From contig NC_068988.1 of NCBI RefSeq assembly GCF_001194135.2, positions 17,541,419 through 17,605,418 of the forward strand: a stretch of 64,000 nucleotides of DNA. The letters run 5' to 3'. Positions 3,694 to 46,370 of the stretch are shown here, in pieces. The notes under the pieces were generated by a model. That model searched no databases, had not been told where the DNA came from, and saw only the letters and a program-made list of their open reading frames with translations. Made by a program: the position numbers and the translations under genes. Source of the stretch: Octopus bimaculoides. Taxonomy: Eukaryota. The first letter of the stretch is position 1. Every line of letters begins with the position of its first letter.

Positions 3694-3710
3694 TATTATT
3701 ATTATCATAA

Positions 3711-10170: not shown

Positions 10171-10603
10171 TTATACTCTTTTACTCTTATACTTGTTTCA
10201 GTCCATTGACTACGGCCATGCTGGAGCACCACCTTTAGTCGAGCAAATAGACCCCAGGACTTATTCTTTGTAAGCCTGCCTAGTACTTATTCTATCGGTC
10301 TCTTTTGGCGAACCGCTAAGTTACAGGGAAATAAACACACCAGCATCGATTGTCAACAGATGTTGGGTGGGGGGGACAAACACAGACACTTAAACATACA
10401 CACATACACACACACACACACATATATATGTAAACATATATACGACGGGCTTCTTTCAGTTTCCGTCTACCAAATCCACTCACAAGGCTTTGGTCGGCCC
10501 GAGGCTATAGTAGAAGACACTTGCCCAAGGTGCCACGCAGTGGGACTGAACCCGGAACCATTTCGTAAGCAAGCTACTTACCACACGGCCACTCCTACGC
10601 CTT
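10171..10603 (-). mobile_element. SINE family C, near full length, with internal (CA)/(TA) microsatellite
   Basis: The reverse complement begins aggcgtaggagtggccgtgtggtaagtagc (A box), then ggttccgggttcagtccc (B box) and ggcaccttgggcaagtgtctt (CORE-like motif), and ends gactgaaacaagtataagagtaaaagag. May be one of the published octopus OK/OR1/OR2 families; not assignable by eye. Confidence 0.92.
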
Positions 10604-11372: not shown

Positions 11373-12975
11373 ATGTATGTATGTATATATATATATATGG
11401 GCGTTTGTATTGTTCTAATCTCCACACACCCATTATTTTCGACAAATGCGTGTGCTAATTACAATTATTTGCTCGAGATGATTGTTATATTCTTATGAAT
11501 ATTTGCAAATTATGGCTAACATCATTCATTTGGATGTTACCATGACAATGGAAATACAACATTGACATTAAATGGTATATATTACACCCAAATGAATGTA
11601 ATAAAGTAAAGAAGCCATGTAAACATGACAACAAATCCAAATAATTCGGTTTTAATTTATCGCTTTCTAATTTCGAGAGCGTAATACTCTTACTTTAATA
11701 GACTGTTGATATTTGTTTACCTTCCATATTTCCTGTCCACCATTTCATTTGAATGATTATTTATATTCGTAGTAGTATTTTCTTTCATTATCAGCCACGA
11801 GTAAATATTGTAATAGTAAACGCTTTATGATTTTTATGCAGTATCTCCCATTAAAATTGTTGATGTTAACAATAGCATTCGATCTCATCATAACAACAAC
11901 AACAACAATAACAACGAAAAAGAATATCCTTAAGAGAGAATTTTTCCTCTAGTTATGTTAACATTTATAGAGAAAACGGTTGTCCAGAGACGCCATCAAC
12001 TAAGAGTGTCTTATATATTATTGATTTTTAAATTAATTCCACGTATTGGCTCCTTAGTGACCGAGATACTTAGCTTAGCTTCTATCGGTTATTTTTCCAT
12101 TTACAGAATAAATGAATTATAAAAGGGGAGACATGGCTGGGGATGTAAATGCATTATGATTTTTTTTTTTTTTTGTTATTGTTAAATTTCTATCCAATCT
12201 GATTTCCTCGAAAAGAGGATGTAGAATACGCTAAGCAACTTTTAGTAGTTTATACTTTTTGCTAATAGGAAAATAAAAATGTTAAACTGTACGTTCGATT
12301 ACGAAAATGGTCATGGTGGTTGTCTGTGCATTAATCTCTCCCATGTTAGAAAATATCTCTCGTAAAATGTTATCCAGAAAGATGCAATATGTGAATGAAT
12401 ATAATTCATTCATGTTGTTTCCTAAGTGCTTTGGTAGCGCAAAGCAAGCAAAATGGCTTCAAATGCAATCGACACACAAACCTGGAATCCGTTCTTTGAT
12501 TGTTTATTTATTTCCTGAAAGAACACGAGAGAAATTTTTCCAAAATAGGGATAACTTTAATAGGAAACATTTTTTTTGTCTGAGCTTTAGTATCACAGGT
12601 TTAACTACTTTCTTACCTCCTTATGTGTGGGCAAGTAGATTTTAGAGACGACTGGCGTTTTATCCGTGATTGTAAAATACACAAATCCACTTCATTGAGC
12701 TCATGATTTTATTATCGATGCAGTTAGACGCGGACCTGACGGCCGAAATTTAAACTAAGATGACAGATGTGAAAACCAATACAGTGAAACATTTTATCCA
12801 ATAAACTAACAAAACTGCCAATTAAATGCCTTAGGAAATATTTGAACATATGAATAATCTGAATATGAATTATTTAGATCATTCATAGGAACAGCAAATC
12901 CTAGGGCTAAAATCATCCAGATTTTTGTCTCAGGTGCAAGAGCATGTTTTATAAGGCAGCATAGGATTCTGAATG

Positions 12976-13162
12976 ATCTTTTCTACTCTAAGTACGAGGT
13001 CCGAAATTTTTGGCATGGGACCAGTCGATTAGATCGACCCAGTACGCAACTGGTACTTAATTTATCGACCTTGAAGGGATGAAAGGCAAAAGTCGATCTC
13101 GACAGAATTCGAGCTCAGAACGTAGACAGACGGAATAAACTTTTCTGCCAGCTCACCGCCTT
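12976..13162 (-). mobile_element. SINE family B, internally deleted
   Basis: Reverse complement of the B consensus (head at 13141-13162, tail at 12976-13030). Confidence 0.85.
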
Positions 13163-13256
13163 ATATTCAGTATATATTATTAATAATAATAATTGTATTT
13201 TTATACACGTTTATTCAAGTCATAAGAATATTGTATGGCATTAACGCTATTCTCTT

Positions 13257-13465
13257 AAGGTGGCGAGCTGGCAGAAACGTTTGCACGCCGGGCGAAATGC
13301 TTAGTGGTATGTCGTTACATTCTGAGTTCAAATTCCACCGAGGTCGACTTTGCCTTTCATCCTTTCGGGGTCGATAAATTAAGTACCAGTTGCGCACTGG
13401 GTCGATATAATTGACTGGTCCCCTCCCCCAAAATTTCGGGCCTTATACCTAGAGTAGAAAAGATT
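13257..13465 (+). mobile_element. SINE family B, short tail
   Basis: aaggtggcgagctggcagaaacg...ttctgagttcaaattccaccgagg...agtagaaaagatt. Confidence 0.92.
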
Positions 13466-13756
13466 AACGATGTTCCCTTCTGCTAAATGCATTGCAAAAG
13501 AAATGGAACGTAACATTTAAAAGACATTCCAAACGCAAACCTTAATTGGAGATAATTTGTATTAATCTTAAAATATATATACTCCAGTAAACACATTATA
13601 TACACATGAAAAAGTCTTTAGCATGTGTGTCTGTTTGTTTTGGGTGTGTGGGTGTATGTTTTGGGTGTATGTGGTTGCGTATTTACTCATATACATATAT
13701 GTGGTTGTATATATTGATGTATATGTATACATATACATGAGCACACGAATATGCAT

Positions 13757-14218: not shown

Positions 14219-14868
14219 ATGGATAAATCAAAAATTCGTGTGTTTATGCATATGAGTTTCGTCGTGGACTCAATGCATTCCAGACAGCTCGAAACATCAA
14301 TGATGTTTTTGGTGAAGATATGGCGAATGAGCGCCTGTTTTGAGAAGTTCTGATCTGGTGACTTTATTCTTGAAAATCAGCCTCGTGATAGACCAGAGAT
14401 TAAGGTGGAATATGAGAAACTGGAAACTGTAGTGGAAGTAGGTACATCTTAAACTACGTGTGAGTTAGCAGCAAGGCTTGATGTTTTCATTCCAACTGTA
14501 TCGGACCATCTGAAACAAATAGGCAAGGTAAAGAAGCTAGAGAAGTGGGCACCGCACGAACTTTGCTTTCACGACATAAAAGCAAGCCATTTTGCATTGT
14601 ATTGTTACGTGTGATGACAAATGGATTCGTTTCAGCAATAGCAAGCGTTCTGTACGGTGGTTGATTAGAGAAGAAATGTTAAAATACAATCCAAAAAAGA
14701 ATAAACAACTTTTTGCAACGAAAAATCTTCAAATATGAAGAAGATGCAAAAATAGCCTTTCGTGATTTCCTCACCGCTTGTTCTCCAGAATTCTTCGTTG
14801 CTGGAATAAATAAGCTGCCGATAAAATGGAAAAATAGTGTTGATAATTTAGGTGAATACTTTGATTAA
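14219..14868 (+). pseudogene. Mariner (Tc1/mariner) transposase pseudogene
   Basis: MDKSKIR.../YEFRRG...ARNINDVFG...FEKF*SGDFILENQPR...LKQIGKVKKLEKWAPHEL (WVPHEL motif), IVTCDDKW (first catalytic Asp), and C-terminal FFVAGINKLPIKWKNSVDNLGEYFD*. It has frameshifts and a deletion removing the rest of the DDD domain. Terminal inverted repeats were not recognisable. Confidence 0.92.
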
Positions 14869-15420
14869 CTGCTCTGGTTTTTTTTGTTTATTTTTTTTTG
14901 AGGTAAACTAAAATAAACTTCCAGTTCAAAATTCCAGTCCAAAAAATGAGTGCAAATTTATGCGAAATATAATTACATTTCTAAGAGATTTAATGAAGTG
15001 AATATGTAAACTTATGAGAATGTTTGATACGTATTATACAACAGAAACTAAATAACATAAATACCATCTATTCACAATCTTTATGGGGATATTTAAGAAA
15101 ATTATTACATATATTTTCAAATATTTCGAAGTTTTTCTCAGAACAGAGAAAGATTCTTCAGCGGAAGTGTTTTATAAGAAACATAATGAACACCTTCGCA
15201 CAATTTTAACGGCATTTTTCTTCCGATGTCTACTTCTCGTTCCATCACTCCCAATAGCAATCTTATCTACCTTCCGATATTAGTTTCTTTTTCTATCGAG
15301 TCTTTAGTATCTCTGTATCCCTCTCATTCTCATTCTCTCTCTCTCTCTCTCTCATTCTCTCTCTCTAATGTGTTTATTATATTACACCTGTCAAGAATTT
15401 TTACTTTTACTACTCTGTCG

Positions 15421-16436: not shown

Positions 16437-16967
16437 CAAAAATAAAATATAATCAATGAGAATACAACAAACATACTGAATTTCTAATAAGTTCTCTTGG
16501 TAGGGAAATGTATGAAACATTAAAGGTATTTTGACATTTAATAAGAGTGATTATATATTATAGTATAAAATAAGAGCAGGAAAATTACATCAAGAAACAT
16601 CACAGAAGATATACGTCCAAAATAATATTGTATTAATAGATAGATGTCTAAATATATAAAGTATGATTATTTAAAAAAGTTTAAAAGTTAAAAATATCTT
16701 CTGATCGCTTCATGAATTTATTACTCTTCGAAATGGAATCTAAAATTCATAATCATTATGAGTTAATACATCCACTCGTCAGAGAGAAAGAGGGTGAAAT
16801 GCCGTGTAGTCAATCGAATGCTATTTAAAAATATATGGAAAAGATGTTGTTTAAAAAGTTACTGGCATAGATATGCGTTGGTACACTCTTGTGCTAAAGA
16901 TTTTGAAGAAATAACATACATCCGTGGTAAAATCCACTGCAGTAATCCATAACGGCTGTGTGTAAAT

Positions 16968-17349
16968 TGTTGGCACTCCATCACTTACGACGTCGAGGGT
17001 TCCAGTTGATCCGATCAACGGAATAGCCTGCTCGTGAAATTAACGTGCAAATGGCTGAGCACTCCACAAACACGTGTACCCTTAACGTAGTTCTCGGAGA
17101 GATTCAGCGTGCCACAGTGTGTCAAGGCTGACCCTTTGAATTACAGGCGCAACAGAAACAGGAAGTAAGAGTGAGAGGAAGTTGTGGTGGAAGAGTACAG
17201 CAGGGTTCGCCACCATCCCCTGCCTGAGCCTCGTGGAGCTTTAGGTGTTTTCGCAAAATAAAAACTCACAATGCCCTGTCTCGGAATCGAAACCGCGATC
17301 ATATGACCACGAGTCCGCTGCCCTAACCACTGGGCCATTGCGCCTCCAC
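16968..17349 (-). mobile_element. SINE family A, full length, (AAC) tail
   Basis: Head gtggaggcgcaatggcccagtgg (A box) and ggtttcgattcc (B box); 11-bp target-site duplication tgtgtgtaaat at 16957-16967 and 17350-17360. Confidence 0.95.
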
Positions 17350-17375
17350 TGTGTGTAAATATAAAGCCCATAATT

Positions 17376-17593
17376 CTTATTTCTTTGTTGCCCACAAGGG
17401 GCTAAACATAGAGGGGACAAACAAGGACAGACAAAGGGATTAAGTCGATTACATCGACCCCAGTACGCCACTGGTACTTATTTAATCGACCCCGAAAGGA
17501 TGAAAGGCAAAGTCGACCTCGGCGGAATTTGAACTCAGAGCGTAGCAACAGACGAAATACCGCTAAGCATTTCGCCCGGCGTGCTAACGTTTC
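17376..17593 (-). mobile_element. SINE family B, long-tail variant, cut by a gap
   Basis: B core followed by the tail ...gtttagccccttgtgggcaacaaagaaataag; the head runs into the N-gap at 17594. Confidence 0.92.
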
Positions 17594-17959
17594 NNNNNNN
17601 NNNAAAGTAGTTTTTGCCTTTTATAGTTGCGTATATCATTGTTATATTTTATGCAAATATAAAAATAGCCGTTTACTGACCCAATATAGAGTAAAATCAT
17701 GTAATATTCAAATTATTATATTTAAAATCAGTTTGTTGTACCTTAGAACTGTACAGGTTCTAATTTTAAGAAAACATATTTCTGGCATTCATCCAATGGA
17801 TAATTTACATTATGTGAAATGTGTACATTTAAAATAATTTAAATTTAATTTTCTTTTTTGCTTACCTGTGACTATCCTACTATTATTATGATACCACTAT
17901 ATGAAAAATAAGAAAAATAAGATATTAATGTGAATCTTTACTCGATGATCTCTTACAGT

Positions 17960-21397: not shown

Positions 21398-22021
21398 NNN
21401 NNNNNNNNNNNNNNNNNNNNNNNNNNNNNNNNNNNNNNNNNNNNNNNNNNNNNNNNNNNNNNNNNNNNNNNNNNNNNNNNNNNNNNNNNNNNNNNNNNNN
21501 NNNNNNNNNNNNNNNNNNNNNNNNNNNNNNNNNNNNNNNNNNNNNNNNNNNNNNNNNNNNNNNNNNNNNNNNNNNNNNNNNNNNNNNNNNNNNNNNNNNN
21601 NNNNNNNNNNNNNNNNNNNNNNNNNNNNNNNNNNNNNNNNNNNNNNNNNNNNNNNNNNNNNNNNNNNNNNNNNNNNNNNNNNNNNNNNNNNNNNNNNNNN
21701 NNNNNNNNNNNNNNNNNNNNNNNNNNNNNNNNNNNNNNNNNNNNNNNNNNNNNNNNNNNNNNNNNNNNNNNNNNNNNNNNNNNNNNNNNNNNNNNNNNNN
21801 NNNNNNNNNNNNNNNNNNNNNNNNNNNNNNNNNNNNNNNNNNNNNNNNNNNNNNNNNNNNNNNNNNNNNNNNNNNNNNNNNNNNNNNNNNNNNNNNNNNN
21901 NNNNNNNNNNNNNNNNNNNNNNNNNNNNNNNNNNNNNNNNNNNNNNNNNNNNNNNNNNNNNNNNNNNNNNNNNNNNNNNNNNNNNNNNNNNNNNNNNNNN
22001 NNNNNNNNNNNNNNNNNNNNN
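21398..22021. other. Assembly gap (one of ten: 7252-7261, 11087-11246, 17594-17603, 21398-22021, 30397-30614, 35871-36544, 41779-41946, 53362-53752, 57695-57793, 60252-60309)
   Basis: N runs, nine of ten abutting dinucleotide microsatellites; exons could be hidden in them. Confidence 1.
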
Positions 22022-23290: not shown

Positions 23291-24485
23291 CTAGCAAGAA
23301 GTACCCGGCGTTGCCTGGGCTAAAGAAAGTAATGAAATTTAACGCCGTCAAGATTATGCAGGTAACAACTTCTAGTAGCTGAATAACCAACGTTCTATGT
23401 AACTCTGCAATCCATACCAACATGGAACATAGACGTTTGTCTAACTTATTTCGTAACCAGAAAACAGGTACAGATTATAAACAATGAAAGGCCGTGCGTA
23501 GAGTACGCACAAATAGACAGTGAATATATCACGTTATTGCTCCACTTTTATACACACAGATATATATTCACGCATGTCAGTCGAAATGTGAAAGTGTGAT
23601 AGTGATACTCTAATATTCAATGGTTTTACACTTCTGTATGATATGGACCTACTATTCATGTAAATGATTCTTCATATACTGTGTTTTCTTGCCAGGTTTG
23701 TCATTGAGAGTGTAGAGATACTTTACATCTCCATCTTTAAAATATCCAGCATACAGCTGACCGTGTGAGAAGCAAAGTTGAAGGAGGTTAAGTCCCGCCA
23801 GATTTAGACATTACAAAGCTTAGTTTGACAGGAAACTGCAGTCTCTTGAACTGAAATGGGACATCATTTGAAATGAGACGTATCCTTGGAATGAAGACAT
23901 TCTCACCAATCATGTTGCCAGGATGGAGAAGAGTTTTCTCAGCTGCATAGGAGACTTGCACATTTGTGCCTTTGTCAGAGTGGCATCCCAGTGTGCATCA
24001 TCTTCCAGAAGATCTCTGAGATGGGAAGCCTGGCGATATGTTTGACATACTATGTCATCAAGGCTGTAAATGATGACAGGTCCCTTGACATGGTCCAGTA
24101 GAAGCCTTAGATAGTAGCACTCTGAGTAGTTGAGATGGACAGCATAGACTCTGCCCAGTGTGTCTGATTTATTGATTCCCAGATGATGTGTGGGTGCTCC
24201 AAGTGCACGTCTTTTCAGTTTGTTTTGGTACCAGGTATGGAATTGTGGAACTTCAATGTATAAAAGTCTTATAGCAAATCCATCATCTTGACAAGGTAAA
24301 GAGTGACTATAAGAGGGATCGAGTTGAGTAGATATAGAGGCAATTATGCAGATAAACAAATTAGATATGCTAAACGTAACAGTTTGCGTATAAAATATAA
24401 AATATGTATATATGTATACATGCAGAACGAGAGAAAGCAAAACGAAAACTTTCAGATGATGAATGTTTAAATATAAATATATAGA
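23291..24485 (-). mobile_element. Helitron, internally deleted non-autonomous copy with both termini
   Basis: Minus strand A|TCTATATAT at 24485. RepHel fragments are YYLRLLLDHVKGP...LLEDDAHWDATL...LRKLFSIL and GENVFIPRI...PFQFKRLQFPVKLSF...FSHGQLY. The 3' hairpin cccaggc-aac-gccggg (23304-23319) is followed by CTAG|T at 23291. The 5' end is less certain than the 3' end. Confidence 0.85.
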
Positions 24486-25071
24486 TGTTTATATTAATAG
24501 ATTCAACTTACAGAGCGTACAAATGACAGGAAATTAAAGCAGTGGAAGAAAGTTTTTATAAGTCCAACAGCTGTTGGGGAGGGGGATCAGAGATCCATCA
24601 TAATGCTGGTAGATACAGTTCATCACAATATGCGGTCGTAATGGAAGCAATCAACATTGGATAAAACGAGCCTCCATCACCAGGGTGGAAAAGACCTTAC
24701 GTTTCAGATCCTGTTGCGGAGCCCCTTGTGGGCAATACAGAATTAATATATATATAGGTACTGTAAATTTTAGAGGTGTTACTTGATAAGTGTAAGCACC
24801 TGTATATGCCGGATAGTGGCAGAGGTAATATTATATATATATATATATATAATTCTCAGAAAGGGAGTAGAATAAATCCACACTGATTACTCACGAATGA
24901 GCGCAGCAGTGTATAACATCTGAGGCGGACAATCACCCACATTTTCTTTGACTCAACCTGTATTTATTTATTCTGAAACAAATATACTATTGATTGATTT
25001 TCTACCATTGAATACATGTTCATTGATTATTACCTGACATTTACGTAATTATTTTCAAAGTCATTTACAAA

Positions 25072-25112
25072 TAACTAACGTTTCTTTTTTTTTTCTTCTT
25101 TTTCAGGTAAGT
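25072..25112 (+). other. Recursive splice site (ratchet point / zero-length exon)
   Basis: Branch point TAACTAAC at 25072-25079, 24/24 pyrimidines at 25081-25104, and CAG ending at 25106 immediately followed by a perfect donor GTAAGT (25107-25112). Confidence 0.7.
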
Positions 25113-25367
25113 TCCTGTGATTCGAAATGGCTATACACTCGTTCCCCATTTTTTTTTCACCTTTCCATTAAACACTGAAAATCTGTGTTCCTTCCCCACT
25201 GCGTTTTATATCTGTTTGTTTCTTTAATGTCAAAAGACCTCTACTATCCAATCCTCACTCTGGTTCATCCGAGTGTATTATGCCAATCTGTTATCCAGTC
25301 ATTTATTCACCCGGCTTAGAGGTGAGCTTAAATAACGTTTTCTTGTTCATAACATTCTTTGCTATTA

Positions 25368-25530
25368 CTCCTTCTTCTTCTTCTTCTTCTTCTTCTTATT
25401 ATTATTATTATTATCATTATTCATCTTCCCTATCTTCTTTTTCTTCTTCTCCTCCTCCTCCTTCTTCTCCTGTTCCTCCTCCTCCTTCTTCTTCTCCTGT
25501 TCCTCCTCCTCCTTCTTTTTCTTGCTGTTG

Positions 25531-25563
<33 letters not shown>

Positions 25564-25665
25564 CCACCATCACCACCACCACAACCACCACCACAGTTAT
25601 AATCATCACCTTCATCATCATAATCATCATCATCATAATCATCATCAGTAGCAGCTGCAGCAGCA
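25368..25665. repeat. Compound trinucleotide tract (TCT)n(TAT)n(CCT)n(CAT)n(CAC)n
   Basis: Read directly; source of the poly-S/P/H/L/R ORFs in the track. Confidence 0.95.
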
Positions 25666-26159
25666 TTATAATCTTGCTTCTCTTCTTTTTTTTTTTACTA
25701 TAACAACCACTGCTGGTGCTTCTGTCGTTGTCGATATTGACGATGGTGGTGATGTTGGTCGTGCTGGTACAACTAGTATTATTCCATAAATTAATTCACT
25801 CTGTGAAAGCGTCGGCGTTTATTTGAAGCCTTATAAATCTCAATAGAAACAAGTATGTCGCTTGAATTAGATTCGATTCCAGAGGAAAAAAAAAAACATT
25901 CCAGACAGTTCTCCAATAGTTCAATGATGTTTAAAACATTCGATTATCTTCTGCATTTTTGTTATATTTTGCGACACTTTTACTTTACTATCATTAATCA
26001 TTCAGTACAATAACAATAATAGCATTTTCAGTAATAGTGGAGTCGCGTGGCTTTGTGGTTAGTGTATTGCACTTAATATCGTAAGAGTGGTTTCGACTCC
26101 TGGACAAGGAAATAAAATTTTTACGTGTGTATATGTACATAATTCTACAATAAGCACAA

Positions 26160-26332
26160 AGTCTCCAATTTTGTGGGTGGGGTTAGTCAATTTCGTTGAC
26201 ATCAGTATTCAATTGAAGTATCGAATTCGAAGTGGTAAGAAGGAATTTGAAAGTTAAAGACAGACGAGATGCTGCAAAGCACTTTGTCTGGTCTACTAAT
26301 AATTCTGTTAGCTCGCTGACTTAATAACTTAA
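26160..26332 (-). mobile_element. SINE family B, old degenerate copy
   Basis: Reverse complement aagtcagcgagctaacagaatt...tcgtctgtcttta...tcaaattc. Confidence 0.6.
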
Positions 26333-26369
26333 CAACAACAACAACAACAACAATTATAATAATAAGGTT

Positions 26370-28435
26370 TTCTTTATTAAACAAAACCGGTTCACAACAC
26401 ACAAAAAAACATTCGGGATGGTACAAGAGAATGCAATGACGGTTTACATAAAATGGAGCTCGTGAAGTGTAGAAAAAATATAATATATTTTAACACTGAC
26501 AAATTTTACAAAGGAAGGAGACTTTCATGGGCTGCTCGTGGAAATCCCACTAAAATATAGAGGAACTGACCTGTAGGGCAAACGCTCTCCCCATAACGCC
26601 TATATGCGCGTGCTTAGAATATGCCTGTAAACTCGGACCATTCTTGTAACATTCACACACCCGTCAACAAAATTTTTGGGAAGCAGCACTTCCTTCTCTT
26701 CCATGATTTTCTTTTTCAAGTGAAACTTGAAACACTTGACGTGTGCTTGGCCAAAGTGGGAAGTATCAATCTTCTGCTTTTTCAATCTGGTCCATCACAC
26801 AGCCTCCTTCGCTAAGGCTACCAGACAAGAAAACGTTGCCTGTCCTTCCCGGCCAAAGAAGGCGGCGGGGCGATCTTCGCAACTGACTCAGCTAATAGCC
26901 GGATCTTTTCTGGACGTGATAACAGGTTTTTAACATAAGCTAACAGGTCAGCAATACTCGGGAACTGGACGAGAGTGCGCAAAGCATTTTCGTCGCCCTG
27001 AGCGCATCTTGAAGCAACTCTAGCTGACAGCACTTCCATGCCTGTAGAGGTTATCCCGAGCCGGCAATGCACCCCATCAAAGCACTGTCAGGCCAGGGAT
27101 TTCTGTAAGTTATCAATGGGCCCCGTCCCGTAAGCCTACTCATTCTCATCGACGCCCAAAATCTCCCAGTGAACATCGTCGTACCTGCCCGCCACTAAGC
27201 CTCTGTAGAATGTCAGATTGCCAGTCTGACAGGGGATTTTGAGCGCTTGACGACAATTTAAGTGACAAACACCCTGTCTTGGTCTACGCTTGATCCATGA
27301 CTGCTGCTCAGCCAAAGAGACGCGCAGTGAAAAAGCTGTCTGAAAAATGACGACCACACCTACTCACTACAATAAAATGCGAGAGATATAGCCTCAGCGT
27401 ATATCTGCGCATCAACGGACACGACACGCCAGCCCTAAGCCCGCGGGTATTGACAGCAAATGGAGCGTCAGACTATTGAAACACGACCCTTCCACATAAA
27501 ATGAAAGAACATGTGATCCAATTTGGTCAGACGCATCTTGAGGCAAGGCACGACGGTTAGACGTTCATATGTAATAAAGCCGATGTAAGACCTTGTCACC
27601 TCTGCCCGACCTTTTATAGAACGTTTACTCTCGGTCCATTTCTGGGTTTAATTAGCCACCCTGCACGTCATCTAGTCCCAGCTCCTCTCCAGCTGGAGAT
27701 TTGGACCAAACCAGACTCTGAGAAATTTAACCGGTTTCTCCGTCCAGTGTCCTACGACGTTGTTGGACAATATGGACCTGCCTCTATAGGTTCTGAGCTG
27801 CAGGCCCACTGACTTATGTTGGTTAATTTTTATTCCTGTTATCATTTCGCATTGTTTTAAGCAGTGCCGAGCTCGTCTATTTGCTTGGTGTTCGACACTA
27901 TGAAGGTGTTGTCGTCAGTGTACGACGACACTGTTCGCACGAAATGCCTCTCAACGCTCTAGTTCGCGCGAGAGGCCTCTCAGTGCTACTGATTTCTGCA
28001 GTAGTGTCTGTAGAAATAGTACATATAGAAAAGAGGGGAGTGGAGTCTGTTGACAGACCAAGTGCAAGAAGTTAATTATTCCTTTAGGTAACCGTTCACA
28101 GGAACTACTGATCAGATGTTGCTGTACATTGCGGTAATCCAACCATAGAAAACGGGACCGAACCCCGCCATAATGAGAACGGCCACCAAATATTGGTGTT
28201 TGTCCCTATCAAAGACTTTAGACTGATCCAGTGCTTGATCAGGGCCTCACCCATGACAGCTTCTTTACCCAACTTGTCTATGATATATCGTATGAGGTGG
28301 GGGTTGTGTAACGCTGAATCTATAAGACAAGCAAATACTTATACACTTAAGAATCTAATTCAACGAGTAGAGTCCATGTGTTTAATCGGACGGTCACGCG
28401 TAGGAGTCAGTGAAGGCATCCACTATATGTCTCAG
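26370..28435 (-). mobile_element. L1/Tx1-clade LINE, 5'-truncated ORF2 remnant with 3'UTR
   Basis: RT motifs LDQSKVFDRDKHQYL, FLYVLFLQTLL and SYTDD; a degenerate Cys/His knuckle RCAQGDE.ALRTLVQ; ORF end at ~26600; AATAAA near 26380. Many stops and frameshifts. Confidence 0.9.
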
Positions 28436-31166: not shown

Positions 31167-31533
31167 GGAGGCGCAGGCGTGGCTGTGTGGTGGAAAGCTT
31201 ACTTCCCAACCACATGGCATCTTGGGGGAGTGTCTTCTGCTATAGGCTCGGGCCGACCAAAGTCTTGTGAGTGGATTTGGTAGAGGAGCCTGAAAGAAGC
31301 CCGTCGTATATATGTGTATGTGTGTGTTCGTGCGTGTGTGTATTTGTTATTTGTGTCTGCGTTTGTCCTTCCACCACCGCTTGACAAGCGATATTGGTGT
31401 GTTTTCGTCCTCGTAATCTAGCGGTTAGACAATACGATGGATAGATTAAGCTCTGGGGTCAATTAGTCCAACTAAAGGTGGTGCTGCAGCATGGCCATAG
31501 TCAAACCACAGAAGCAAGTTCGAGAATAAAAGA
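31167..31533 (+). mobile_element. SINE family C, diverged near-full copy
   Basis: ggaggcgcaggcgtggctgtgtgg...gggccgaccaaagtcttgtgagtggatttggtag...cagcatggcc. Confidence 0.9.
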
Positions 31534-32304
31534 ATATATATATATATATATAATTATAAGAAGGTCAGTAATGAGTAGGGCCACATGCTAGAAATAGACG
31601 CAAAATTGCTCTAAAATCTAAATGATTTACTGGGAACTAGAGGACAAATGGCGCTAAGAACTACATTATTTACTGGTAGATAATGTAGTTCTGATAGTCA
31701 TTTGGCATTACTCATTAGTGGCGCTACTCATTAGTGCCCTTACTATAATTATATTTATATAATTATATATTTCGTATTAATTGTTACCTATATGGTTTAT
31801 TGTTTGCTGGTTACTTGATAAAATCTTATAGAGAGTTTATCCTTGATCATAAATATGTATATATATATGTATTACATATATATAAATTAGAAATGAAAAT
31901 AAAATAGATTGAATAATTGAATCAATATATAATAGATTCAATCCAGTTTTTATTATTTCTGTATAAACAAATGAATAATTAAGTTACAGCTGTTTCTACT
32001 TCATTAACTAGGCTTTGTTTAAGATTGCAAATTACCATTTAAAAAAAATATAATCATGGTTCGTCAGAGAGACATATTCTTGAAATATATTAGGAAAATA
32101 GCAAGTGAACATTTTTCTATAAGTATAACGCATTTAAAACGCTATATTAAGAGTGAGCTTAATAATAATAATAATAATATAGAGATCTATATTATATACA
32201 TATATAAGATATATATGTAATATACGTATATATAAATATAATATATATATATATATATATAATACAATATATATATGTATACATATATGTGTGTGTGTGT
32301 GTGC

Positions 32305-32943: not shown

Positions 32944-33886
32944 ATATGTGTGTGTGTGTGCGTGTTCTGATATAAATGGAGACGAGCACCAACATTTTCA
33001 TGTAGTACACGTGAACAAGATCTCTTCATATGAGACCACTGATTTGTAATCAGTGTGGGTGAGTGTGTGCGCGCGCACGTACATGTGTGTGTACATGTGA
33101 GTAATTCCGCGTGCAAATTGCAGCGTATTCATTACAATTCATATTATCGAAAAACTTCCTTACAACTATTTGAAAGCGCAAATATAAAGATATGCAGAAT
33201 CTAACAAACAAAAGCAAAGCAAGAATACATCTTCGTAGAGAGATAATATATTAATTAGATATATCTTGGTTTGATGAAACTGTAAGCTTCTCAAATGACA
33301 TTTCCGTGAAGAAAATATCGCTTAGACGACGTTATTTAAATTTTCTAGTTGTGAAATATCATGCGATATTCACTAAACCTTTAGATCAAAGGCATTTATT
33401 GTATATATGTGCTGACAAATCAGGTTTCAGGAATGAGATTGCTTTTATTTCCTGTAAAATTCCAAAGATGTATGTTACCTAACCGAATTGTTCTTTGGAA
33501 GAACGCCTGTCATGATTACAAGAAATGCGTGTTCGAGTCGTACCTGCAACATCCGACTTTCTCCATCCGATATTCCAAATCAATAATTCATTCCAGTTAT
33601 TTTTCAAGTTTATAAACTCTTCTGACGTCAAAAGTATGCAATTCTGGCCGGAAAGAAAAAGTTTCTAAAATTGGAAGAGAATGTCGAAGTACTTCTTTGA
33701 TCCATCGGTGGAACGGCTCTAATGTTTAGAAATGTGGGTTCGAAGCATGCGAGGAGGTTTTTAGTATTCTATCCAAAAGGCTTTTTAAACCAGATATTTA
33801 CACGCTTTTATTTATAGCTCTACGTCCCCGCAATTTTCTTAACATTATTATTATCAGTATCATCATTATTATCATTATTATCAATA

Positions 33887-35258
33887 AGGCGGTGAGCTGG
33901 TAGAAACGTTAGCACGCCGGGCGAAATGCTTACCGATTATTTCGTCTGCCACTACGTTCCGAATTCAAATTCCACCGAGGTCGAATTTGCCTTTCCTCCT
34001 TTCGGGGTCGATAAATTAAGTTCGAGTTGCACACTGGGGTCGATCTAAGCGACTGACCTCCTCCTCCCAAATTTCAGGCCTTGTGCCTATAGTAGTAAAT
34101 ATTATCATAATTATTAATAATAATAATAATAATAAGATGGGGAGATGGCAGAATCGTTAGCACGAAGGGTTAAATACACAACGGCATTTCTTCTGTCTCC
34201 ACCACGATCTGTGTTCAAATTCCACCGAGTAGACGTTGCCTTTCATCGTTTCGGAGTCGGTAAAATAAGTACAAGTTGAGCACTGGGGGTCGATGTAATC
34301 GACTATTCCCCTCCTTTAAATTTCCGGCCTTGTGCCTATACTAGAAAGGATTATTATTAAGGCGGTGAGCAGGCATAATCGTTAGTAATCCGTGTTAAAT
34401 GCGTAGCCGTATTTCATCTGTCGCCACCACTTTCTGAGTTCAAATTCTGTTGAGGTTGATTTTGCCTTTCATTCTTTCGGGGTTGATAAAATAAGTACCA
34501 GGTGAAGACTGGGATTGTTGTAACCGATTCATCTCCTCCCTCCAAATTGGTGCCCTTGTGGAAAAAATTGAAACCATTATTACTAATGCAACGAGCTAGC
34601 AGAATAATTCACGCATCAGGATTTCTGCCGACTTATTAGGTTCTGAGTTCAAATTCCGCCGAGGTCAAATTTGCCTATCATTCTCTCGAGATCGATGAAA
34701 TAATTATCAACTGAGACCTGGGATGTTACCCCAACCTCAAAACTGCGGGCTTAGTACCAACATTTGAAATTATTTTTATAATTATTATTAATGCAGTTAG
34801 CAAACAGAACCATTAGGCATTGGAAACAAAAAGTCTAACCATATTTTTTCCGACTCACTAGGTTTCGAGTTCAAATCCCACCGATGTCGATTTTGCATCT
34901 CATCATTTCGGGTTCGATATAATAATCACCAGTCAAACATTGCGGCTGTTGTACGCGTTTTCTCCGTCCCCTGAATACTATTGGACTTTTCCCAAACATA
35001 GAAAGGATTATTATTACTGTTGTTGTTGCTAGTAGCAGTATTTTTGTGCAGGTATAATCGTTAAATCGTTGGATAAAAAAATGTCTTGCAGTATTTCATG
35101 TCTTTACGGTCCAAGTTTCAAAATCTGCCGAAATCAAACTTTGACTTTCATCCCTTCGGTGTCGATAATATATAGTACCAGTCAAATACTTGGGAAGATG
35201 GTATCGATAAATCTCCCCTTTCAAAACTGCTGGCCTTGTACTTGAATCAGGAAATATC
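33887..35258 (+). mobile_element. Head-to-tail array of six SINE-B copies
   Basis: Copies at ~33887-34103, 34134-34357, 34359-34582, 34584-34775, 34790-35015 and 35046-35258. Each has a gagttcaaatt-like box and a tttcatc.ttcgg core, and they are separated by (ATT/AAT)n-type tracts. Confidence 0.85.
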
Positions 35259-35700: not shown

Positions 35701-35870
35701 GTATGAAGGTGTATATGTGTATATATATATATATGTATATGTATGAAGGTGTATATATGTATATATATATATATGTATATGTATGAAGGTGTATATATGT
35801 ATATATATATATATATATGTATATGTATGAAGGTGTATATATGTATATATATATATATATATGTATATGT
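35640..35870. repeat. Minisatellite of ~37-43 bp, TATGTATATGTATGAAGGTG(TA)n, at least 5 units, running into a gap
   Basis: The GAAGGTG core recurs five times among variable (TA)n. Confidence 0.9.
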
Positions 35871-37099
35871 NNNNNNNNNNNNNNNNNNNNNNNNNNNNNN
35901 NNNNNNNNNNNNNNNNNNNNNNNNNNNNNNNNNNNNNNNNNNNNNNNNNNNNNNNNNNNNNNNNNNNNNNNNNNNNNNNNNNNNNNNNNNNNNNNNNNNN
36001 NNNNNNNNNNNNNNNNNNNNNNNNNNNNNNNNNNNNNNNNNNNNNNNNNNNNNNNNNNNNNNNNNNNNNNNNNNNNNNNNNNNNNNNNNNNNNNNNNNNN
36101 NNNNNNNNNNNNNNNNNNNNNNNNNNNNNNNNNNNNNNNNNNNNNNNNNNNNNNNNNNNNNNNNNNNNNNNNNNNNNNNNNNNNNNNNNNNNNNNNNNNN
36201 NNNNNNNNNNNNNNNNNNNNNNNNNNNNNNNNNNNNNNNNNNNNNNNNNNNNNNNNNNNNNNNNNNNNNNNNNNNNNNNNNNNNNNNNNNNNNNNNNNNN
36301 NNNNNNNNNNNNNNNNNNNNNNNNNNNNNNNNNNNNNNNNNNNNNNNNNNNNNNNNNNNNNNNNNNNNNNNNNNNNNNNNNNNNNNNNNNNNNNNNNNNN
36401 NNNNNNNNNNNNNNNNNNNNNNNNNNNNNNNNNNNNNNNNNNNNNNNNNNNNNNNNNNNNNNNNNNNNNNNNNNNNNNNNNNNNNNNNNNNNNNNNNNNN
36501 NNNNNNNNNNNNNNNNNNNNNNNNNNNNNNNNNNNNNNNNNNNNTATATATATATATATATGTACATATACATACACAGACACATATGTTTGGGTGCGTG
36601 TATATGTATATGTGTGTGTTTGTATTAGGCTTTTTTATATTTCGCATCCATTTAATGAACTTATTCTTTGCTATTATAGTTTTTTTTTTCTTGTTTCCGT
36701 TATTGGAATACGGCCATGCCGTGATATCGACTTGAAAGACTCAGTCGGAATATTTTCATACTTAATTTAAGTCTCGAGTTTACAGAATCACTCTCATTTT
36801 GCCAAACCGCTAGGCTACATTTGTGTAAACACATTATTACCCGGTTAAGCGGGTTTTGCATTATGATTTCAAATGCCCTTCAACTTTAATTCTTCAAAGA
36901 TTGATAGTATAATGTTCCATATAGTATATTCATAGTACAATGTTCTATATCATTGACTTTCTTACCCACCAAATAGCAGGCATTGCAGCTGCATTAAAGT
37001 ATCTATATATTGCTTACCATTTGGCATAATGCTTTTCAAATTAATTATAAATTATTTAGAAACTAAAAGCCGATAAATTCATATTTCTGTAGTAGTCCG

Positions 37100-39164: not shown

Positions 39165-40480
39165 TATGGTATCATGGCCCATTCAAGTAGAGGATTTTTG
39201 TTGGTATAGGTGGCTTATCTGATATCCTTTAAAAAAATTGTCCATATTCCGTTTAAGGGTGATGCGAACTTTTTCCTTTATGATTTGTTTTAGGATAATG
39301 TTAAATAGGCAGGCCAGTTGTATGAAAGAAATTATGTTGCAGTGCATTTATGTGTTGTGATGCTGAATTATGTAGGGGACGCATGGCACGTACTCCTAGT
39401 CTTGGCTGAATTCCGAAACTAATGTCAAGGCCGTTTGGGCAATGCAAGTAGCATATTCTCCCCATTGTGCAAATGATGTATCGTTCACGGTGGCACTGGA
39501 GAGAATAGAGTTTCAGTGCTTTAAGGCGGTCCTAATAATAGAAATCGGTCATGCCCTTAATTGTTTTAGTGAATGCTCTCTGGGGTTTCGATTCTCGTAA
39601 TGTTTTGTTTTGTGTGGGGAAACCACAGGGGGCAGCAGTATTCTAGGTGTGGCGGTACAAAGGAGAAAAGAGCAATGACGTTGTTGTTGATGTGGGCGCT
39701 CGAATGGAGATTGTTGTCAACAATTACACCTCTCTGATATTATTAGATGTTGTGAGTGGTCCTCCCGAAGGAAGAGAGTATGGTTGTTTTAGCATAGTCT
39801 TTTATCCAAAATGCATCAGTTCAAAACTTCTCTCGTTTAGTCGCATTTTGTCTACGTCTGACAATTGGCTTACAACATGTAGATCAGACTGGAGTTTAGT
39901 TCGGTCATTCCTTCGTCGATAATGTTCGGGAGATTGTAGTCATCGGCGAATATTTTCACTTTCTTGTGTTTCATGACGCTTGAAATGTTTATATAGACTA
40001 TAAACAGAAGCGGACGCAAGACAGTCCGCTGCAGAAACACCACTGGTGACAATTGTTGGGCTTGAATGGATTTCACGTATTACATGTGTTCTGTTCCCCA
40101 GGAAATACTTAATCCAGTGTAGTAGTTTTCCACAGATTCCAATATTTGACAATTTTGACTGTGGGATATTGTGATCGACTCTGTCAAACGCTTTTGCTGA
40201 AATCAAGACATATGACGTCAGCTTTCTAACCTAGTCCAAAGGCTTTAAGGTTATCGTTGATGTGATGTAAGAGCTGTGTAAGACAGTCCATGCCACAGCG
40301 AATTGCTAGTTGGAATTTAGAAGATTGTATCTCTCCAGGAAGCGAGCAATTCTTGTTCTCACTACCCTTTCAAATGCTTTGAGAATATGGGAGATGAGTG
40401 AGATTGGGTGATAGTTGACTGAGAGGTATCTATTTCCCTGTTTCAAGACTATATATATAGTAACAACAAGAACTTTTTGA
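39165..40480 (-). mobile_element. CR1-like LINE, RT and 3' end remnant
   Basis: NYHPISLISHILKAFERVV, SAKAFDRVDH, TVLRPLLFIVYI, IFADD, EYCCPLW, DRLKALKLYSLQ..RERY; multiple stops and frameshifts. Confidence 0.9.
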
Positions 40481-41747
40481 TGGAGATTCATTAACCTTTT
40501 AATGATTTAGTTGCTGTATTTGCCATCCATAGGATATTACAAATATGATTTGCGAAATCCATGGATTAACACGTGTTCATCATCATCATCATTATATATT
40601 TATAATTATTATAAGCTTAAGATTATAAATTTTCTTTATTTCGATAAAGTTTCTGTTCACTACTGTTATCTTTCACTTTTTCTTTATTTATCATGTCTCA
40701 TTTTTTTATTTACTTTTTAATCACTCCTTGAAATATTAATGTATTAATATAATTGTTACTTTTAGTAACCCTTTGTATTTTTTATACGTCACAATAATCT
40801 GTAGTGTAAGAATTTATTCTCTAGTGATTGCTTTTCTATATTTAGTTTTCTTCCTCATACTCACTTTACATGATTACGTATATATCTCATACAAGGTTTA
40901 CATGTATGGCAAGTTCTGCGCTTCTTTGCAAACACATTATGGTCCATCTGATCTTCTCAAGTAACCATTCTCTGGCTAAATTACATCCGTCCTTTCGAGA
41001 TAATTTCAATTAACTATATATTGGTGCGAGTTTAATTCTGAATTCAACCAAAATTAGCATGTTCTGAATGAAATATTAATCCACAAACCAATGAGTGTAA
41101 GCCTCATTAAAACTGCTCTTTTGAATTGTTTTGGTATGAATTTCAATTTATTTTATTCTGTCTTCAATCAAATTCACGATAGAAATATTAATCTCTTGCC
41201 GTTGTATTTTTAACAACTGCAAACTCAGTTTTAAAATTTTAATAACAAATGCTAAGCTCCATTTAAAATAACGACATCAAGAGCAACATCTTCCTTATAC
41301 CACTTCGTCACTAATCAATGATGGAATTGTTTATTGTAATAACAGATAAATTTGATTAGCTGGAAATCTATAATGAAACATTAGCTTTCTTCCAAAATAT
41401 CATCGCAAACATATTGGTGTGGCTGCGTTTTTTCTTTCTTTCTTTTCCATTCATCTTTACATTTCTTTCTTTTTTCTTTCTGTCCCCTCTCTCTTTTCCT
41501 CTTTCTGTTCTGTCTCCTTCTTTCTCTACCCTCCCTCTCACACTTTCTTTTCTCTCCATCATTTGCTCACTCGCAAACGCGTGCGCATACGCTTTCATTT
41601 TCTTTCTGATTTTACCGATTGTTACAGTTTTCTCGTTTTCTTTGTGACGTTCAATCTTTTCATACTGAATTCAAATATTTCTAATACGGTAACAATTTAA
41701 CACCATATTCTAACAGTTTTCTGTCTTTTCTTCTTCCATATTTATAC

Positions 41748-41778
<31 letters not shown>

Positions 41779-42018
41779 NNNNNNNNNNNNNNNNNNNNNN
41801 NNNNNNNNNNNNNNNNNNNNNNNNNNNNNNNNNNNNNNNNNNNNNNNNNNNNNNNNNNNNNNNNNNNNNNNNNNNNNNNNNNNNNNNNNNNNNNNNNNNN
41901 NNNNNNNNNNNNNNNNNNNNNNNNNNNNNNNNNNNNNNNNNNNNNNATCCAAATTCACAGGTGAATATGTGACTGGATTTTCATCGATGATTTCATGAAC
42001 CTTGGTTCTTTTCTCTAA

Positions 42019-42074
<56 letters not shown>

Positions 42075-42208
42075 AAATGTGCGAGCGTATGTATATATAA
42101 TGTATATATGCATGCATATATAAATACATAGTTTATTCTACATGGGTAGAGATATAGGAAACAACAGAAGCTGAAAATGCACTGAGAATAGTTAAAATAT
42201 ATTTCATT

Positions 42209-42705
42209 AATATATTGAAAGCTTTAACCGGTTTCACAATTTACAGTGGTTTTCTGAAACTTCAAATAGAAAGACGTGGCTTTTGTCCCAGCTGTCTTGC
42301 TTCTGACTAGTGTTTGAAGCTGGCCTTTTTTTTTTTTTTTTTGATAGGGAGTTCATGGCTCAAATTGAGAACAGCGTAGATTTACTGTGTAATCTCTTTT
42401 CAACAGAGTTGACTTAATGATAACTATGTGATGAAAACAAAAAATTCCTGAAGTTGTTAACGTTGGATACCGTGTTCGTTTATTTTAATCTATTTTCTTA
42501 GATAACTGTGTCAGTGATCGGTCTCAAATATAGAGTTCAAGGACACGTACGTAACACAGAACTTGACAAAAGTGGCAGACGCGTTGTAATTTAATTAATG
42601 ATAGTTAATTGTTTTATAAGCCATGTCTTTCCATTGCTTGAATATGTCTTTCCAGTGCTTGAATATCAGTGTAAATTGTGAAACCAGTTAAAGCTTTAAA
42701 TATAT
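42209..42705. mobile_element. MITE-like element with ~40-bp terminal inverted repeats
   Basis: aatatattgaaagctttaaccggtttcacaatttacagtg (42209-42248) versus cagtgtaaattgtgaaaccagttaaagctttaaatatat (42667-42705). Confidence 0.7.
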
Positions 42706-43315: not shown

Positions 43316-43554
43316 GCGTAGATTTACTGTGTAATCTCTTTTTAACAGAGTTGACTTAATGATAACTATGTGATGAAAACAAAAAAAATCCCTGAAGTCG
43401 TTAACGCTAGATACGGTTTTCGTTTATTTTAATCTATTTTCTTAGATAATTGGGACAGTGATCGGTTTCAAATGTAGAGTTCAAAGACCAGTAGGTAACA
43501 CAAAATTTGACAAAAGTGATAGACGTGCTGTAATTTATTTGATGATAGCTAATT
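43316..43554 (+). repeat. Direct duplicate of 42374-42610
   Basis: gcgtagatttactgtgtaatctc...gataactatgtgatgaaaac...ttgacaaaagtg occurs in both; diverged by roughly 10-15% by eye. Confidence 0.92.
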
Positions 43555-46330: not shown

Positions 46331-46370
46331 GATATGCATTTCCCTTTCTTCTAACTATTAAGATGTTGTT

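What the first reader, a model, noticed from the sequence alone, without database searches (positions are those of the whole stretch)
25072..25112. Textbook recursive splice site in a probable octopus long intron
Seen: consensus branch point (A at 25078, 28 nt from the AG), a pure 24-nt pyrimidine tract with no intervening AG, and CAG fused directly to GTAAGT. It is the only such high-quality AG|GTAAGT junction I found in the window. Established: AG|GT ratchet points remove very long introns stepwise in Drosophila and in long vertebrate neural genes. I am not aware of a description in cephalopods, but could not search the literature. Inference: the + strand host intron is spliced recursively here, which would imply a ratchet system in coleoid long genes.
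Basis: partly seen in the sequence, partly recalled or inferred. Interest (0 to 1): 0.85.

Follow-up and report, generated by a model that had tools for sequence, protein, structure and literature searches.

The report
Candidate recursive splice site, octopus DNA
A near-perfect back-to-back "end of intron / start of intron" signal really sits at 25106|25107 on the + strand of octopus DNA, followed 215 bases later by a second strong donor site as known recursive sites are, but nothing here shows the strand is transcribed, so it remains a good untested candidate.

Summary
On the + strand there is CTAAC (branch A at 25078), a pure 24-nt pyrimidine tract (25081-25104), and CAG|GTAAGT at 25106|25107. 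It is the only such junction in the window.

It is rarer than chance predicts. I expect about 4e-4 such sites per 64-kb window, or roughly 17 in a 2.8-Gb genome. It appeared in 0 of 4500 Markov-simulated windows.

A second strong donor, GAG|GTGAGC, lies at 25322, and only 4 AG|GTRAG sites exist on the whole + strand. This defines a 215-nt, frame-breaking, stop-filled "RS-exon", which is the architecture fly and vertebrate recursive sites require. Chance of that co-occurrence is about 0.013.

The window is Octopus DNA, rich in transposon fragments and microsatellites. No protein-coding exon was detectable, so the host gene, intron and strand are unproven. A mild T>A skew on the + strand is the only hint of + strand transcription. 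Conservation and RNA evidence could not be tested.

- Recursive site with a cryptic RS-exon: about 0.45.
- Unused chance motif: about 0.35.
- Acceptor of a non-coding or poison exon: about 0.15.

If real, it is a new member of a known kind. I found no description in cephalopods.

The parts
25075..25079 (+). Candidate branch point CTAAC (branch A at 25078, position -29 from the 3' splice junction)
   Evidence: Read directly. An exact CTAAC at -18..-40 occurs at 1.5% of random positions, and CTRAY at 7.3%. Drosophila ratchet-point branch points lie at -36..-21 with a peak at -30. Actual use as a branch point is inferred.
25081..25104 (+). Pure 24-nt polypyrimidine tract (TTTCTTTTTTTTTTCTTCTTTTTC), with T at -5 and -6 and no AG between branch point and acceptor
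   Evidence: It is one of 13 pure-pyrimidine tracts of >=18 nt on the + strand, and the only one on either strand followed by NAG.
25105..25106 (+). AG of the candidate 3' splice site (CAG|)
25107..25112 (+). GTAAGT, the candidate regenerated (recursive) 5' splice site. CAG|GTAAGT is a 9/9 match to the consensus that pairs with U1.
   Evidence: It is one of only 4 AG|GTRAG sites on the + strand of the window.
25107..25321 (+). Candidate cryptic RS-exon: 215 nt, not a multiple of 3, with stop codons in all three frames
   Evidence: translations; no open frame. The surrounding non-repeat ORFs had no protein match.
25322..25327 (+). Candidate RS-exon donor GAG|GTGAGC. In its intronic part it is weaker than GTAAGT.
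   Evidence: Only 1.3-1.6% of positions have an AG|GTRAG 30-300 nt downstream.
25371..25647 (.). CTT/CTC/TCA microsatellite block immediately downstream (context only, not part of the splice signal)
23303..24488 (-). Helitron-type helicase-like transposon fragment upstream (context only). Homology to its paralogue stops at 24293, about 800 nt short of the site.
   Evidence: 71% to O. bimaculoides LOC106876819; weaker hits named ATP-dependent DNA helicase. (83% DNA identity, L001 10133-11315 vs window 24293-23303).

Best explanation
The site is a splicing-competent recursive splice site of the ratchet-point type, sitting at the 5' edge of a cryptic 215-nt RS-exon.

Proposed mechanism (each step inferred from the sequence; none observed):
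1. When the + strand is transcribed as part of a long intron, U2AF and U2 recognise the CTAAC branch point, the 24-nt pyrimidine tract and CAG at 25106.
2. U1 binds the downstream donor GAG|GTGAGC at 25322, which defines the exon 25107-25321.
3. The upstream exon is ligated to 25107. This rebuilds a 5' splice site, (exon end)|GTAAGT.
4. That rebuilt donor outcompetes the weaker GTGAGC donor. The 215-nt segment and the rest of the intron are then removed in a second step, leaving nothing in the mRNA.
5. If the GTAAGT donor were not used, a frame-shifting, stop-containing exon would be included.

Shown: the cis elements, their rarity, and the RS-exon layout.
Not shown: transcription, the host gene, and any use of the site.
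For: - All four core elements are optimal and at the stated coordinates.
- It is the only [CT]{16}.AG and the only pyrimidine-tract AG|GTAAGT in 64 kb on both strands.
- The strict motif is expected about 4e-4 times per window. It appeared in 0/1500 windows in each of three Markov simulations and 0/100 shuffles.
- It matches the reported ratchet-point features: TT at -5/-6 in 196/197 fly ratchet points, branch points at -36..-21, and a more prominent pyrimidine tract.
- A second strong donor lies 215 nt downstream. Only 4 AG|GTRAG sites exist on the + strand, so the co-occurrence has a chance of about 0.013.
- The enclosed segment is out of frame with stops in all frames. Cryptic RS-exons in flies and mammals are the same, and there too the ratchet-point donor is the stronger one (abstract of PMC6224609).
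- Joint chance expectation for the strict motif plus a downstream donor is about 0.2 per genome. It is lower still with the branch point included. This assumes the elements are independent.
- T>A skew of about 3% on the + strand: p about 0.015 across 2-kb bins, positive in 7 of 8 8-kb blocks. T>A is the sign seen on the coding strand of introns in Drosophila and, as that paper notes, in humans.
- No coding exon was detected in 64 kb, which is compatible with a giant intron.
- The site is not part of the neighbouring transposon or of any repeat present in the window.
Against: - There is no evidence that the + strand is transcribed, or that the window lies in a gene.
- From O. vulgaris statistics (8.36 genes/Mb, median gene 20 kb, median intron 2.5 kb), my rough estimate is that exon-free 64-kb windows are about ten times more often intergenic than intronic.
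- The skew is weak, the GC skew is not significant, and the skew has not been calibrated in octopus.
- The chance calculations assume independent elements and a composition-based null. A repeat family carrying the motif elsewhere in the genome could not be excluded, because only the window and one 20-kb octopus locus were available.
- The candidate RS-exon (215 nt) is longer than the roughly 50 nt typical of flies.
- Recursive splicing has not been reported in any mollusc in the searchable literature, so its frequency there is unknown.
- In mammals, few strong-motif sites are fully suppressed ratchet points (nine were noted definitively).
- The branch point and downstream donor were added to the motif after looking, which inflates their apparent significance.
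Confidence: 0.45

Rival explanations
1. Fortuitous, unselected juxtaposition. A T-rich tract, one of many low-complexity pyrimidine runs in this region, happens to abut CAGGTAAGT in DNA that is intergenic, antisense to a gene, or otherwise not spliced here. It has no function.
For: - The genome is large and AT-rich, so about 17 bare strict motifs are expected by chance genome-wide.
- Six of the 13 + strand pure-pyrimidine tracts cluster within 25081-25696, beside a CTT/CTC microsatellite block. The tract therefore lies in a locally pyrimidine-rich zone.
- No exon was detected in the window.
- By rough arithmetic, exon-free 64-kb windows are mostly intergenic.
- Exon-like acceptor/donor pairs also occur by chance on both strands, for example + 48715 and - 12616.
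- The first stage presumably screened many windows.
Against: - The full set of elements (perfect branch point, 24-nt tract, CAG, GTAAGT, and a strong donor at +215) has a joint chance expectation well below one per genome under independence.
- The strict motif appeared in 0 of 4500 simulated windows.
- The T>A skew points, weakly, to + strand transcription.
Confidence: 0.35
2. An ordinary 3' splice site of a real but non-coding exon at 25107-25321. This could be a UTR, lncRNA, alternative or poison exon that merely begins with GTAAGT, or an expressed RS-exon that is sometimes included.
For: A strong acceptor and a strong donor 215 nt apart form a normal-sized exon unit. In mammals, expressed RS-exons far outnumber fully suppressed ratchet points.
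Against: - The segment has stops in all three frames and a length that is not a multiple of three.
- ORFs in this region matched no protein in a database that holds the O. bimaculoides proteome.
- An exon starting with GTAAGT by coincidence is a roughly 3e-4 event.
- Once joined to an upstream exon, such a start recreates an optimal donor, so it would tend to be re-spliced anyway. That makes this rival mechanistically close to the main explanation.
Confidence: 0.15
3. The motif is carried by a repeat or a relic. It could be part of an unrecognised transposable element or retroposon, in which case the minus-strand reading ...ACTTACCTG followed by an A-rich run would be a 3' end plus tail. Or it could be a decayed duplicated gene fragment preserving an old intron-exon-intron unit.
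For: - The window is packed with transposon fragments and SINE-like repeats.
- On the minus strand the pyrimidine tract reads as an A-rich tail.
- Genome-wide copy number could not be checked.
Against: - Window 24000-26500 has no other copy of this sequence in the window, only microsatellite matches. Window 24500-26800 has none in the 20-kb O. bimaculoides locus.
- Transposon homology ends at 24293.
- The only candidate target-site duplication is a 9-mer, which is expected by chance.
- No AATAAA lies near the A-rich run.
Confidence: 0.05

Closest known systems
Drosophila intronic ratchet points, or zero-nucleotide recursive splice sites (Ubx, kuz, luna and others; Burnette 2005, Duff 2015, Pai 2018, Joseph 2018/2021)
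   Same: - Juxtaposed acceptor and donor around AG|GT, with an unusually prominent T-rich tract.
- TT at -5/-6.
- Branch point near -30.
- GTAAGT donor.
- A downstream weaker donor defining an out-of-frame cryptic RS-exon.
- Location in exon-free DNA.

   Different: - The candidate RS-exon is 215 nt, against about 50 nt typical in flies.
- The organism is a mollusc, where no ratchet point has been described.
- The defining evidence for the fly sites is absent here: junction reads, a sawtooth coverage pattern, lariats, and very strong ("ultraconserved") motif conservation.
Vertebrate recursive splice sites with RS-exons in long neuronal genes (Sibley 2015; Blazquez 2018)
   Same: The mechanism is exon definition through a downstream donor, followed by competition between the rebuilt donor and the RS-exon donor. 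Inclusion of the RS-exon would disrupt the frame. The genome is large and repeat-rich, like a vertebrate genome.
   Different: Vertebrate sites were found from RNA data in introns of very long genes and are conserved. Here the host gene, its length and its expression are unknown. Few strong-motif sites in mammals are fully suppressed ratchet points.
Cryptic or poison exons, and deep-intronic pseudoexons (for example DMD pseudoexons)
   Same: A strong acceptor and donor enclose a non-coding, stop-containing segment deep in exon-free DNA.
   Different: Pseudoexons do not normally start with a perfect donor consensus. The GTAAGT immediately after the AG is what singles out this site.

Membership tests
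Intronic ratchet point / zero-nucleotide recursive splice site | [quoted passage not shown] | tested here: met
   24-nt pure pyrimidine tract, then CAG|GTAAGT. Unique in the window on both strands.
Intronic ratchet point / zero-nucleotide recursive splice site | TT at positions -5 and -6 (196/197 Drosophila ratchet points) | tested here: met
   Positions 25101-25102 are T.
Intronic ratchet point / zero-nucleotide recursive splice site | Branch point 21-36 nt upstream of the acceptor | tested here: met
   CTAAC with its A at -29, within the range given. This is a motif only; use as a branch point is not testable here.
Intronic ratchet point / zero-nucleotide recursive splice site | Lies in the sense orientation inside a long intron (more than about 11 kb in flies) | tested here: inconclusive
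   No coding exon was detected in 64 kb, so neither the intron nor the strand can be assigned. A T>A skew of about 3% on the + strand is a weak hint. Rough arithmetic favours intergenic DNA for exon-free windows of this size.
Intronic ratchet point / zero-nucleotide recursive splice site | Downstream donor defining a short cryptic RS-exon that is out of frame, with the ratchet-point donor being the stronger one | tested here: met
   GAG|GTGAGC at 25322; the segment is 215 nt with stops in all frames. The length is greater than the fly norm.
Intronic ratchet point / zero-nucleotide recursive splice site | The motif is far better conserved across species than its flanks | not testable with these tools
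   No other cephalopod genome can be searched by DNA here. Exact protein look-ups found nothing and a metagenome scan found nothing.
Intronic ratchet point / zero-nucleotide recursive splice site | RNA evidence: exon-to-ratchet-point junction reads, a sawtooth read-density pattern, recursive lariats | not testable with these tools
Conventional protein-coding exon starting at 25107 | An open reading frame across the exon, or similarity to a known protein | tested here: not met
   Stops in all three frames. No protein hit for non-repeat ORFs of >=48 aa in 1-29.7 kb.
U1 snRNA gene or pseudogene (the minus strand reads ACTTACCTG) | A match to the U1 covariance model beyond the first 9 nt | tested here: not met
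   Rfam at gathering thresholds found no match anywhere in the window. The minus strand continues AAAAAGAAG after ACTTACCTG.
Motif carried by an interspersed repeat | Other copies of the flanking sequence | tested here: inconclusive
   No copy in the window or in O. bimaculoides locus L001. The neighbouring transposon's homology ends at 24293. Genome-wide copy number is not testable here.

The most novel reading that the evidence does not exclude
Coleoid cephalopods use Drosophila-style, selected zero-nucleotide ratchet points with cryptic RS-exons to process giant introns, and 25106|25107 is one of them. That would extend constitutive recursive splicing to Lophotrochozoa. It would argue that the RS-exon mechanism is either ancestral to bilaterians or arises repeatedly wherever introns become very long.
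Probability: 0.4. Interest if true: 0.5.

Novelty: new member of a known kind. Interest (0 to 1): 0.38.

Why it matters
Recursive splicing is documented in insects and vertebrates. I found no report of it in any mollusc in the searchable literature.

Octopus genomes are large and have long genes. A validated ratchet point there would show that stepwise intron removal through RS-exons extends to a third major animal lineage. It would also give a sequence template (pyrimidine tract, CAG|GTAAGT, and a weaker donor within a few hundred nt) for a genome-wide census using public cephalopod genomes and RNA-seq.

It would not change how splicing is understood. A single in-silico site is a lead, not a finding.

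Tried and rejected
- **Coding exon at or near the site.** Rejected: stops in all frames and no protein match.
- **Finding the host gene through exons anywhere in the window.**
  - I concatenated all non-repeat, non-low-complexity stop-to-stop ORFs of >=48 aa into chimeric queries.
  - Two halves were then searched, and neither gave a hit at E<=1e-3.
  - A near-identical exon of >=30-50 aa should have scored well above threshold. Exons in shorter ORFs, UTR exons and lncRNA exons would be missed.
- **Exact look-up of ten window ORFs in the protein collection**, hoping to fetch the same or orthologous loci. None was present.
- **Transposon origin.** The Helitron-like fragment's paralogue in O. 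bimaculoides aligns only to window 23303-24293. The site region has no other copy in the window and none in L001.
- **Retroposon tail with a target-site duplication.** Only a 9-mer (AGTCATTTA at 25059 and 25297) was found, which is expected by chance.
- **U1 snRNA pseudogene on the minus strand.** Rfam found nothing.
- **Pfam confirmation of the ORFs I read by eye as reverse-transcriptase-like** (26821-28340, 144-485, about 40 kb). No hits. Only the Exo_endo_phos fragment at 63759-63998 is supported, so I do not rely on those labels.
- **Scan of JGI metagenome contigs** for a 24-mer next to the site. No match.
- **AATAAA depletion on the + strand** (61 vs 83). The T>A skew alone explains it, so it adds no independent evidence.

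Full report
**1. The observation**

The + strand reads ...aaataaCTAACgTTTCTTTTTTTTTTCTTCTTTTTCAG|GTAAGTtcc....
- CTAAC occupies 25075-25079, with the branch A at 25078, position -29.
- 25081-25104 is a 24-nt run of pyrimidines only.
- There is no AG between the branch point and the AG at 25105-25106.
- CAG abuts GTAAGT (25107-25112).

The claim that this is the only high-quality junction of this kind in the window is also correct. The window holds two AGGTAAGT on both strands, and the other one (50916, minus strand) has only 10/20 pyrimidines upstream. The site is the only [CT]{16}.AG on either strand. In a ranking of all 291 AGGT sites it stands far above the next best, 14901 on + (gag|GTAAAC).

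**2. Is it more than chance?**

- The tool's dinucleotide shuffles gave 0/100 windows with a match, even allowing two mismatches.
- Shuffles destroy low-complexity runs, so I also simulated 1500 windows from each of three Markov models (orders 1, 3, 5) trained on the window. The strict motif appeared in none. A relaxed motif (>=16/20 pyrimidines) appeared 0.005-0.014 times per window.
- An empirical estimate multiplies three numbers: 18 pure-pyrimidine tracts of >=18 nt per window, 0.06-0.12 of tracts followed by (R)AG, and a 1.6-3.4e-4 chance of GTAAGT after AG. This gives about 4e-4 per window.
- An octopus genome of about 2.8 Gb is about 42,000 such windows (23,423 genes at 8.36 per Mb). 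That means roughly 17 chance sites genome-wide.

The bare motif is therefore unusual for one window but not impossible as a chance find in a broad screen.

**3.

Current models hold that intronic recursive splicing needs a cryptic RS-exon in both flies and mammals. A donor downstream of the ratchet point allows exon definition. The rebuilt ratchet-point donor, which is usually the stronger, then wins, so the cryptic exon is skipped. [quoted passage not shown]

Here the next good donor is GAG|GTGAGC at 25322.
- The + strand of the whole window has only four AG|GTRAG sites (25107, 25322, 48715, 60785) and the minus strand has three.
- Only 1.3-1.6% of positions have such a donor 30-300 nt downstream.
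- The enclosed segment 25107-25321 is 215 nt, which is not a multiple of three, and has stop codons in all three frames.
- In its intronic part GTAAGT is a better U1 match than GTGAGC. This follows from the known pairing of the U1 5' end and is not computed here.

This is the predicted architecture, although 215 nt is longer than the roughly 50 nt typical of flies.

Treating the elements as independent, the strict motif plus this donor is expected about 0.2 times per genome. It is rarer still with a CTRAY (7.3%) or exact CTAAC (1.5%) branch point. These extra elements were examined after the fact, and independence is an assumption, so I discount these numbers heavily. They do shift the balance away from pure coincidence.

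**4. Where is it?**

- *The window is Octopus DNA.* The ORF at 23913-24488 (-) is 71% identical to 'uncharacterized protein LOC106876819 [Octopus bimaculoides]', with weaker hits named ATP-dependent DNA helicase. I read this as a Helitron-type fragment from memory of such families; Pfam did not confirm it. That protein's locus on O. bimaculoides chromosome CM046618.1 (L001) aligns to window 24293-23303 at 83%. It also shares the window's SINE-like families at 80-93%.
- *The site is not part of that transposon.* The transposon homology stops at 24293, about 800 nt from the site. Window 24000-26500 has no other copy of the site region in the window, only microsatellite matches. Window 24500-26800 has none in L001. 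The site is therefore not part of any repeat I could see.
- *The window as a whole.* It is a draft-assembly stretch with N gaps, (TA)n and (CA)n microsatellites and many interspersed repeats.
- *No protein-coding exon was detected.* Two chimeric queries built from all non-repeat ORFs of >=48 aa (covering 1-29.7 kb and 30.9-64 kb) found nothing at E<=1e-3 in a database that contains the O. bimaculoides proteome. The window is therefore either intergenic or inside a very large intron, and the host gene and strand cannot be assigned.
- *Prior from gene statistics.* From O. vulgaris annotation statistics (median intron 2.5 kb, median gene 20 kb, 8.36 genes/Mb), my rough estimate is that exon-free 64-kb windows are about ten times more often intergenic than intronic.
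- *The only strand hint.* T exceeds A on the + strand by about 3% after masking repeats. The p-value is about 0.015 across 2-kb bins, and the skew is positive in 7 of 8 8-kb blocks. T>A is the sign seen on the coding strand of introns in Drosophila and, as that paper notes, in humans. The GC skew is not significant, and the effect has not been calibrated in octopus.

**5. Most likely mechanism, and rivals**

If the + strand is transcribed through this site, its strength makes use by the spliceosome very likely. The GTAAGT start then makes re-splicing (a zero-length exon) the expected outcome. The open question is transcription, not competence.

I weighed three things: the rarity of the full architecture, the unfavourable prior for exon-free windows, and the unknown prevalence of recursive splicing in molluscs. 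My estimates are:
- about 0.45 for a working recursive site with a cryptic RS-exon;
- about 0.35 for an unused coincidence;
- about 0.15 for the acceptor of a real non-coding or poison exon at 25107-25321, or an expressed RS-exon;
- about 0.05 for a repeat-borne or relic motif.

These probabilities are judgement, not computation.

**6. Comparison with known systems**

The site matches every cis criterion described for Drosophila ratchet points:
- TT at -5/-6 (196/197 ratchet points);
- branch point at -36..-21;
- a prominent pyrimidine tract;
- GTAAGT;
- a downstream weaker donor with an out-of-frame cryptic exon.

The criteria that actually define membership could not be tested here: location in the sense strand of a long intron, conservation, junction reads, a sawtooth coverage pattern, and lariats. 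It therefore looks built to work like a ratchet point, but membership is unproven.

**7. Novelty**

Full-text searches found no paper combining recursive splicing with octopus. For cephalopods and molluscs they returned one and two papers, each holding the terms only once in the full text; none was opened. Recursive splicing is otherwise described in flies, mammals and lungfish, and the term also occurs in a locust paper that I did not read. If real, this is a new member of a known kind in a new phylum. That is of moderate interest and directly testable with public data.

**8. Limits**

- The chimeric-query design had no positive control.
- Exons inside ORFs shorter than 48 codons, and non-coding exons, would be missed.
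- Only 84 kb of octopus DNA was available for background estimates.
- No RNA data and no second cephalopod genome could be consulted.

Noticed in passing
window 14880-14908 (+): The second-best juxtaposed acceptor/donor on the + strand is ttttttttgtttatttttttttgag|GTAAAC, with the AG at 14901-14902. It has 18/20 pyrimidines, lies 10.2 kb upstream of the main site, and has a much weaker donor. It sits just past an ORF that I read by eye as mariner-like (14453-14865); Pfam gave only a weak HTH hit below its curated cut-off for its first 53 aa.
   Followed up: partly
window 3473-3706, 12972-13467, 17372-17593, 33858-34724, 54032-54865: A SINE-like interspersed repeat family has about 10 or more copies in both orientations. 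It is 80-93% identical to O. bimaculoides locus L001 6387-6754. Its translations repeatedly give NLNSER..RRNTAKHFARRAN.
   Followed up: partly
window 768-1013, 10171-10595, 31214-31538, 46369-46750, 60310-60710; and 16967-17349, 50295-50687, 58994-59379: Two further interspersed repeat families have about 5 and 3 copies. The first also matches L001 20237-20469.
   Followed up: no
window 23303-24488 (-): A helicase-like transposon fragment is 71% identical in protein and 83% in DNA to an annotated 'uncharacterized protein' gene of O. bimaculoides (LOC106876819). This suggests that annotated gene is itself a transposon relic. Pfam gives no domain.
   Followed up: partly
window 63759-63998 (-): An endonuclease/exonuclease/phosphatase (Exo_endo_phos) fragment, Pfam E 4.7e-6, runs off the window end. 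It is probably the endonuclease of a LINE-type retrotransposon.
   Followed up: partly
window 26821-28340 (-), 144-485 (-), about 39900-40300 (+): By eye these ORFs resemble reverse-transcriptase C-terminal regions (YVDD and FADD motifs). Pfam did not confirm any of the sampled ORFs. The chimeric protein search, which included only the ~40-kb one (the other two regions were deliberately left out), gave no hit either. GC content peaks at 0.445 in 26-28 kb.
   Followed up: partly
window 25371-25647: A dense CTT / CTC / TCA trinucleotide microsatellite block, including a 27-nt unit repeated 2.7 times, starts 50 nt after the candidate RS-exon donor. It makes 25081-25700 the most pyrimidine-rich zone of the + strand.
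   Followed up: yes
window 52854-53005: A 30-nt minisatellite with 5.1 copies at 95% identity, unit TTAGAGATTTGAGTAAATATACGATCAATT.
   Followed up: no
window 40001-48000: The T>A skew reaches 0.10 here, three times the window average, together with a negative GC skew. The cause is unknown; it may be a strand-biased repeat or low-complexity content around 41.4-42.3 kb.
   Followed up: no
window 17835-17870 (-): A microexon-like unit on the minus strand: atttttcttatttttcatatag|31 nt|GTAAGC, open in one frame. It is probably chance.
   Followed up: no
window, N runs (e.g. about 21400-22020, 35870-36560, 53300-53750): Assembly gaps are nearly always flanked by (TA)n or (CA)n microsatellites. The draft assembly therefore seems to break at simple repeats, and L001 from GCA_001194135.2 shows the same style with 7 kb of N in 20.5 kb.
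   Followed up: no
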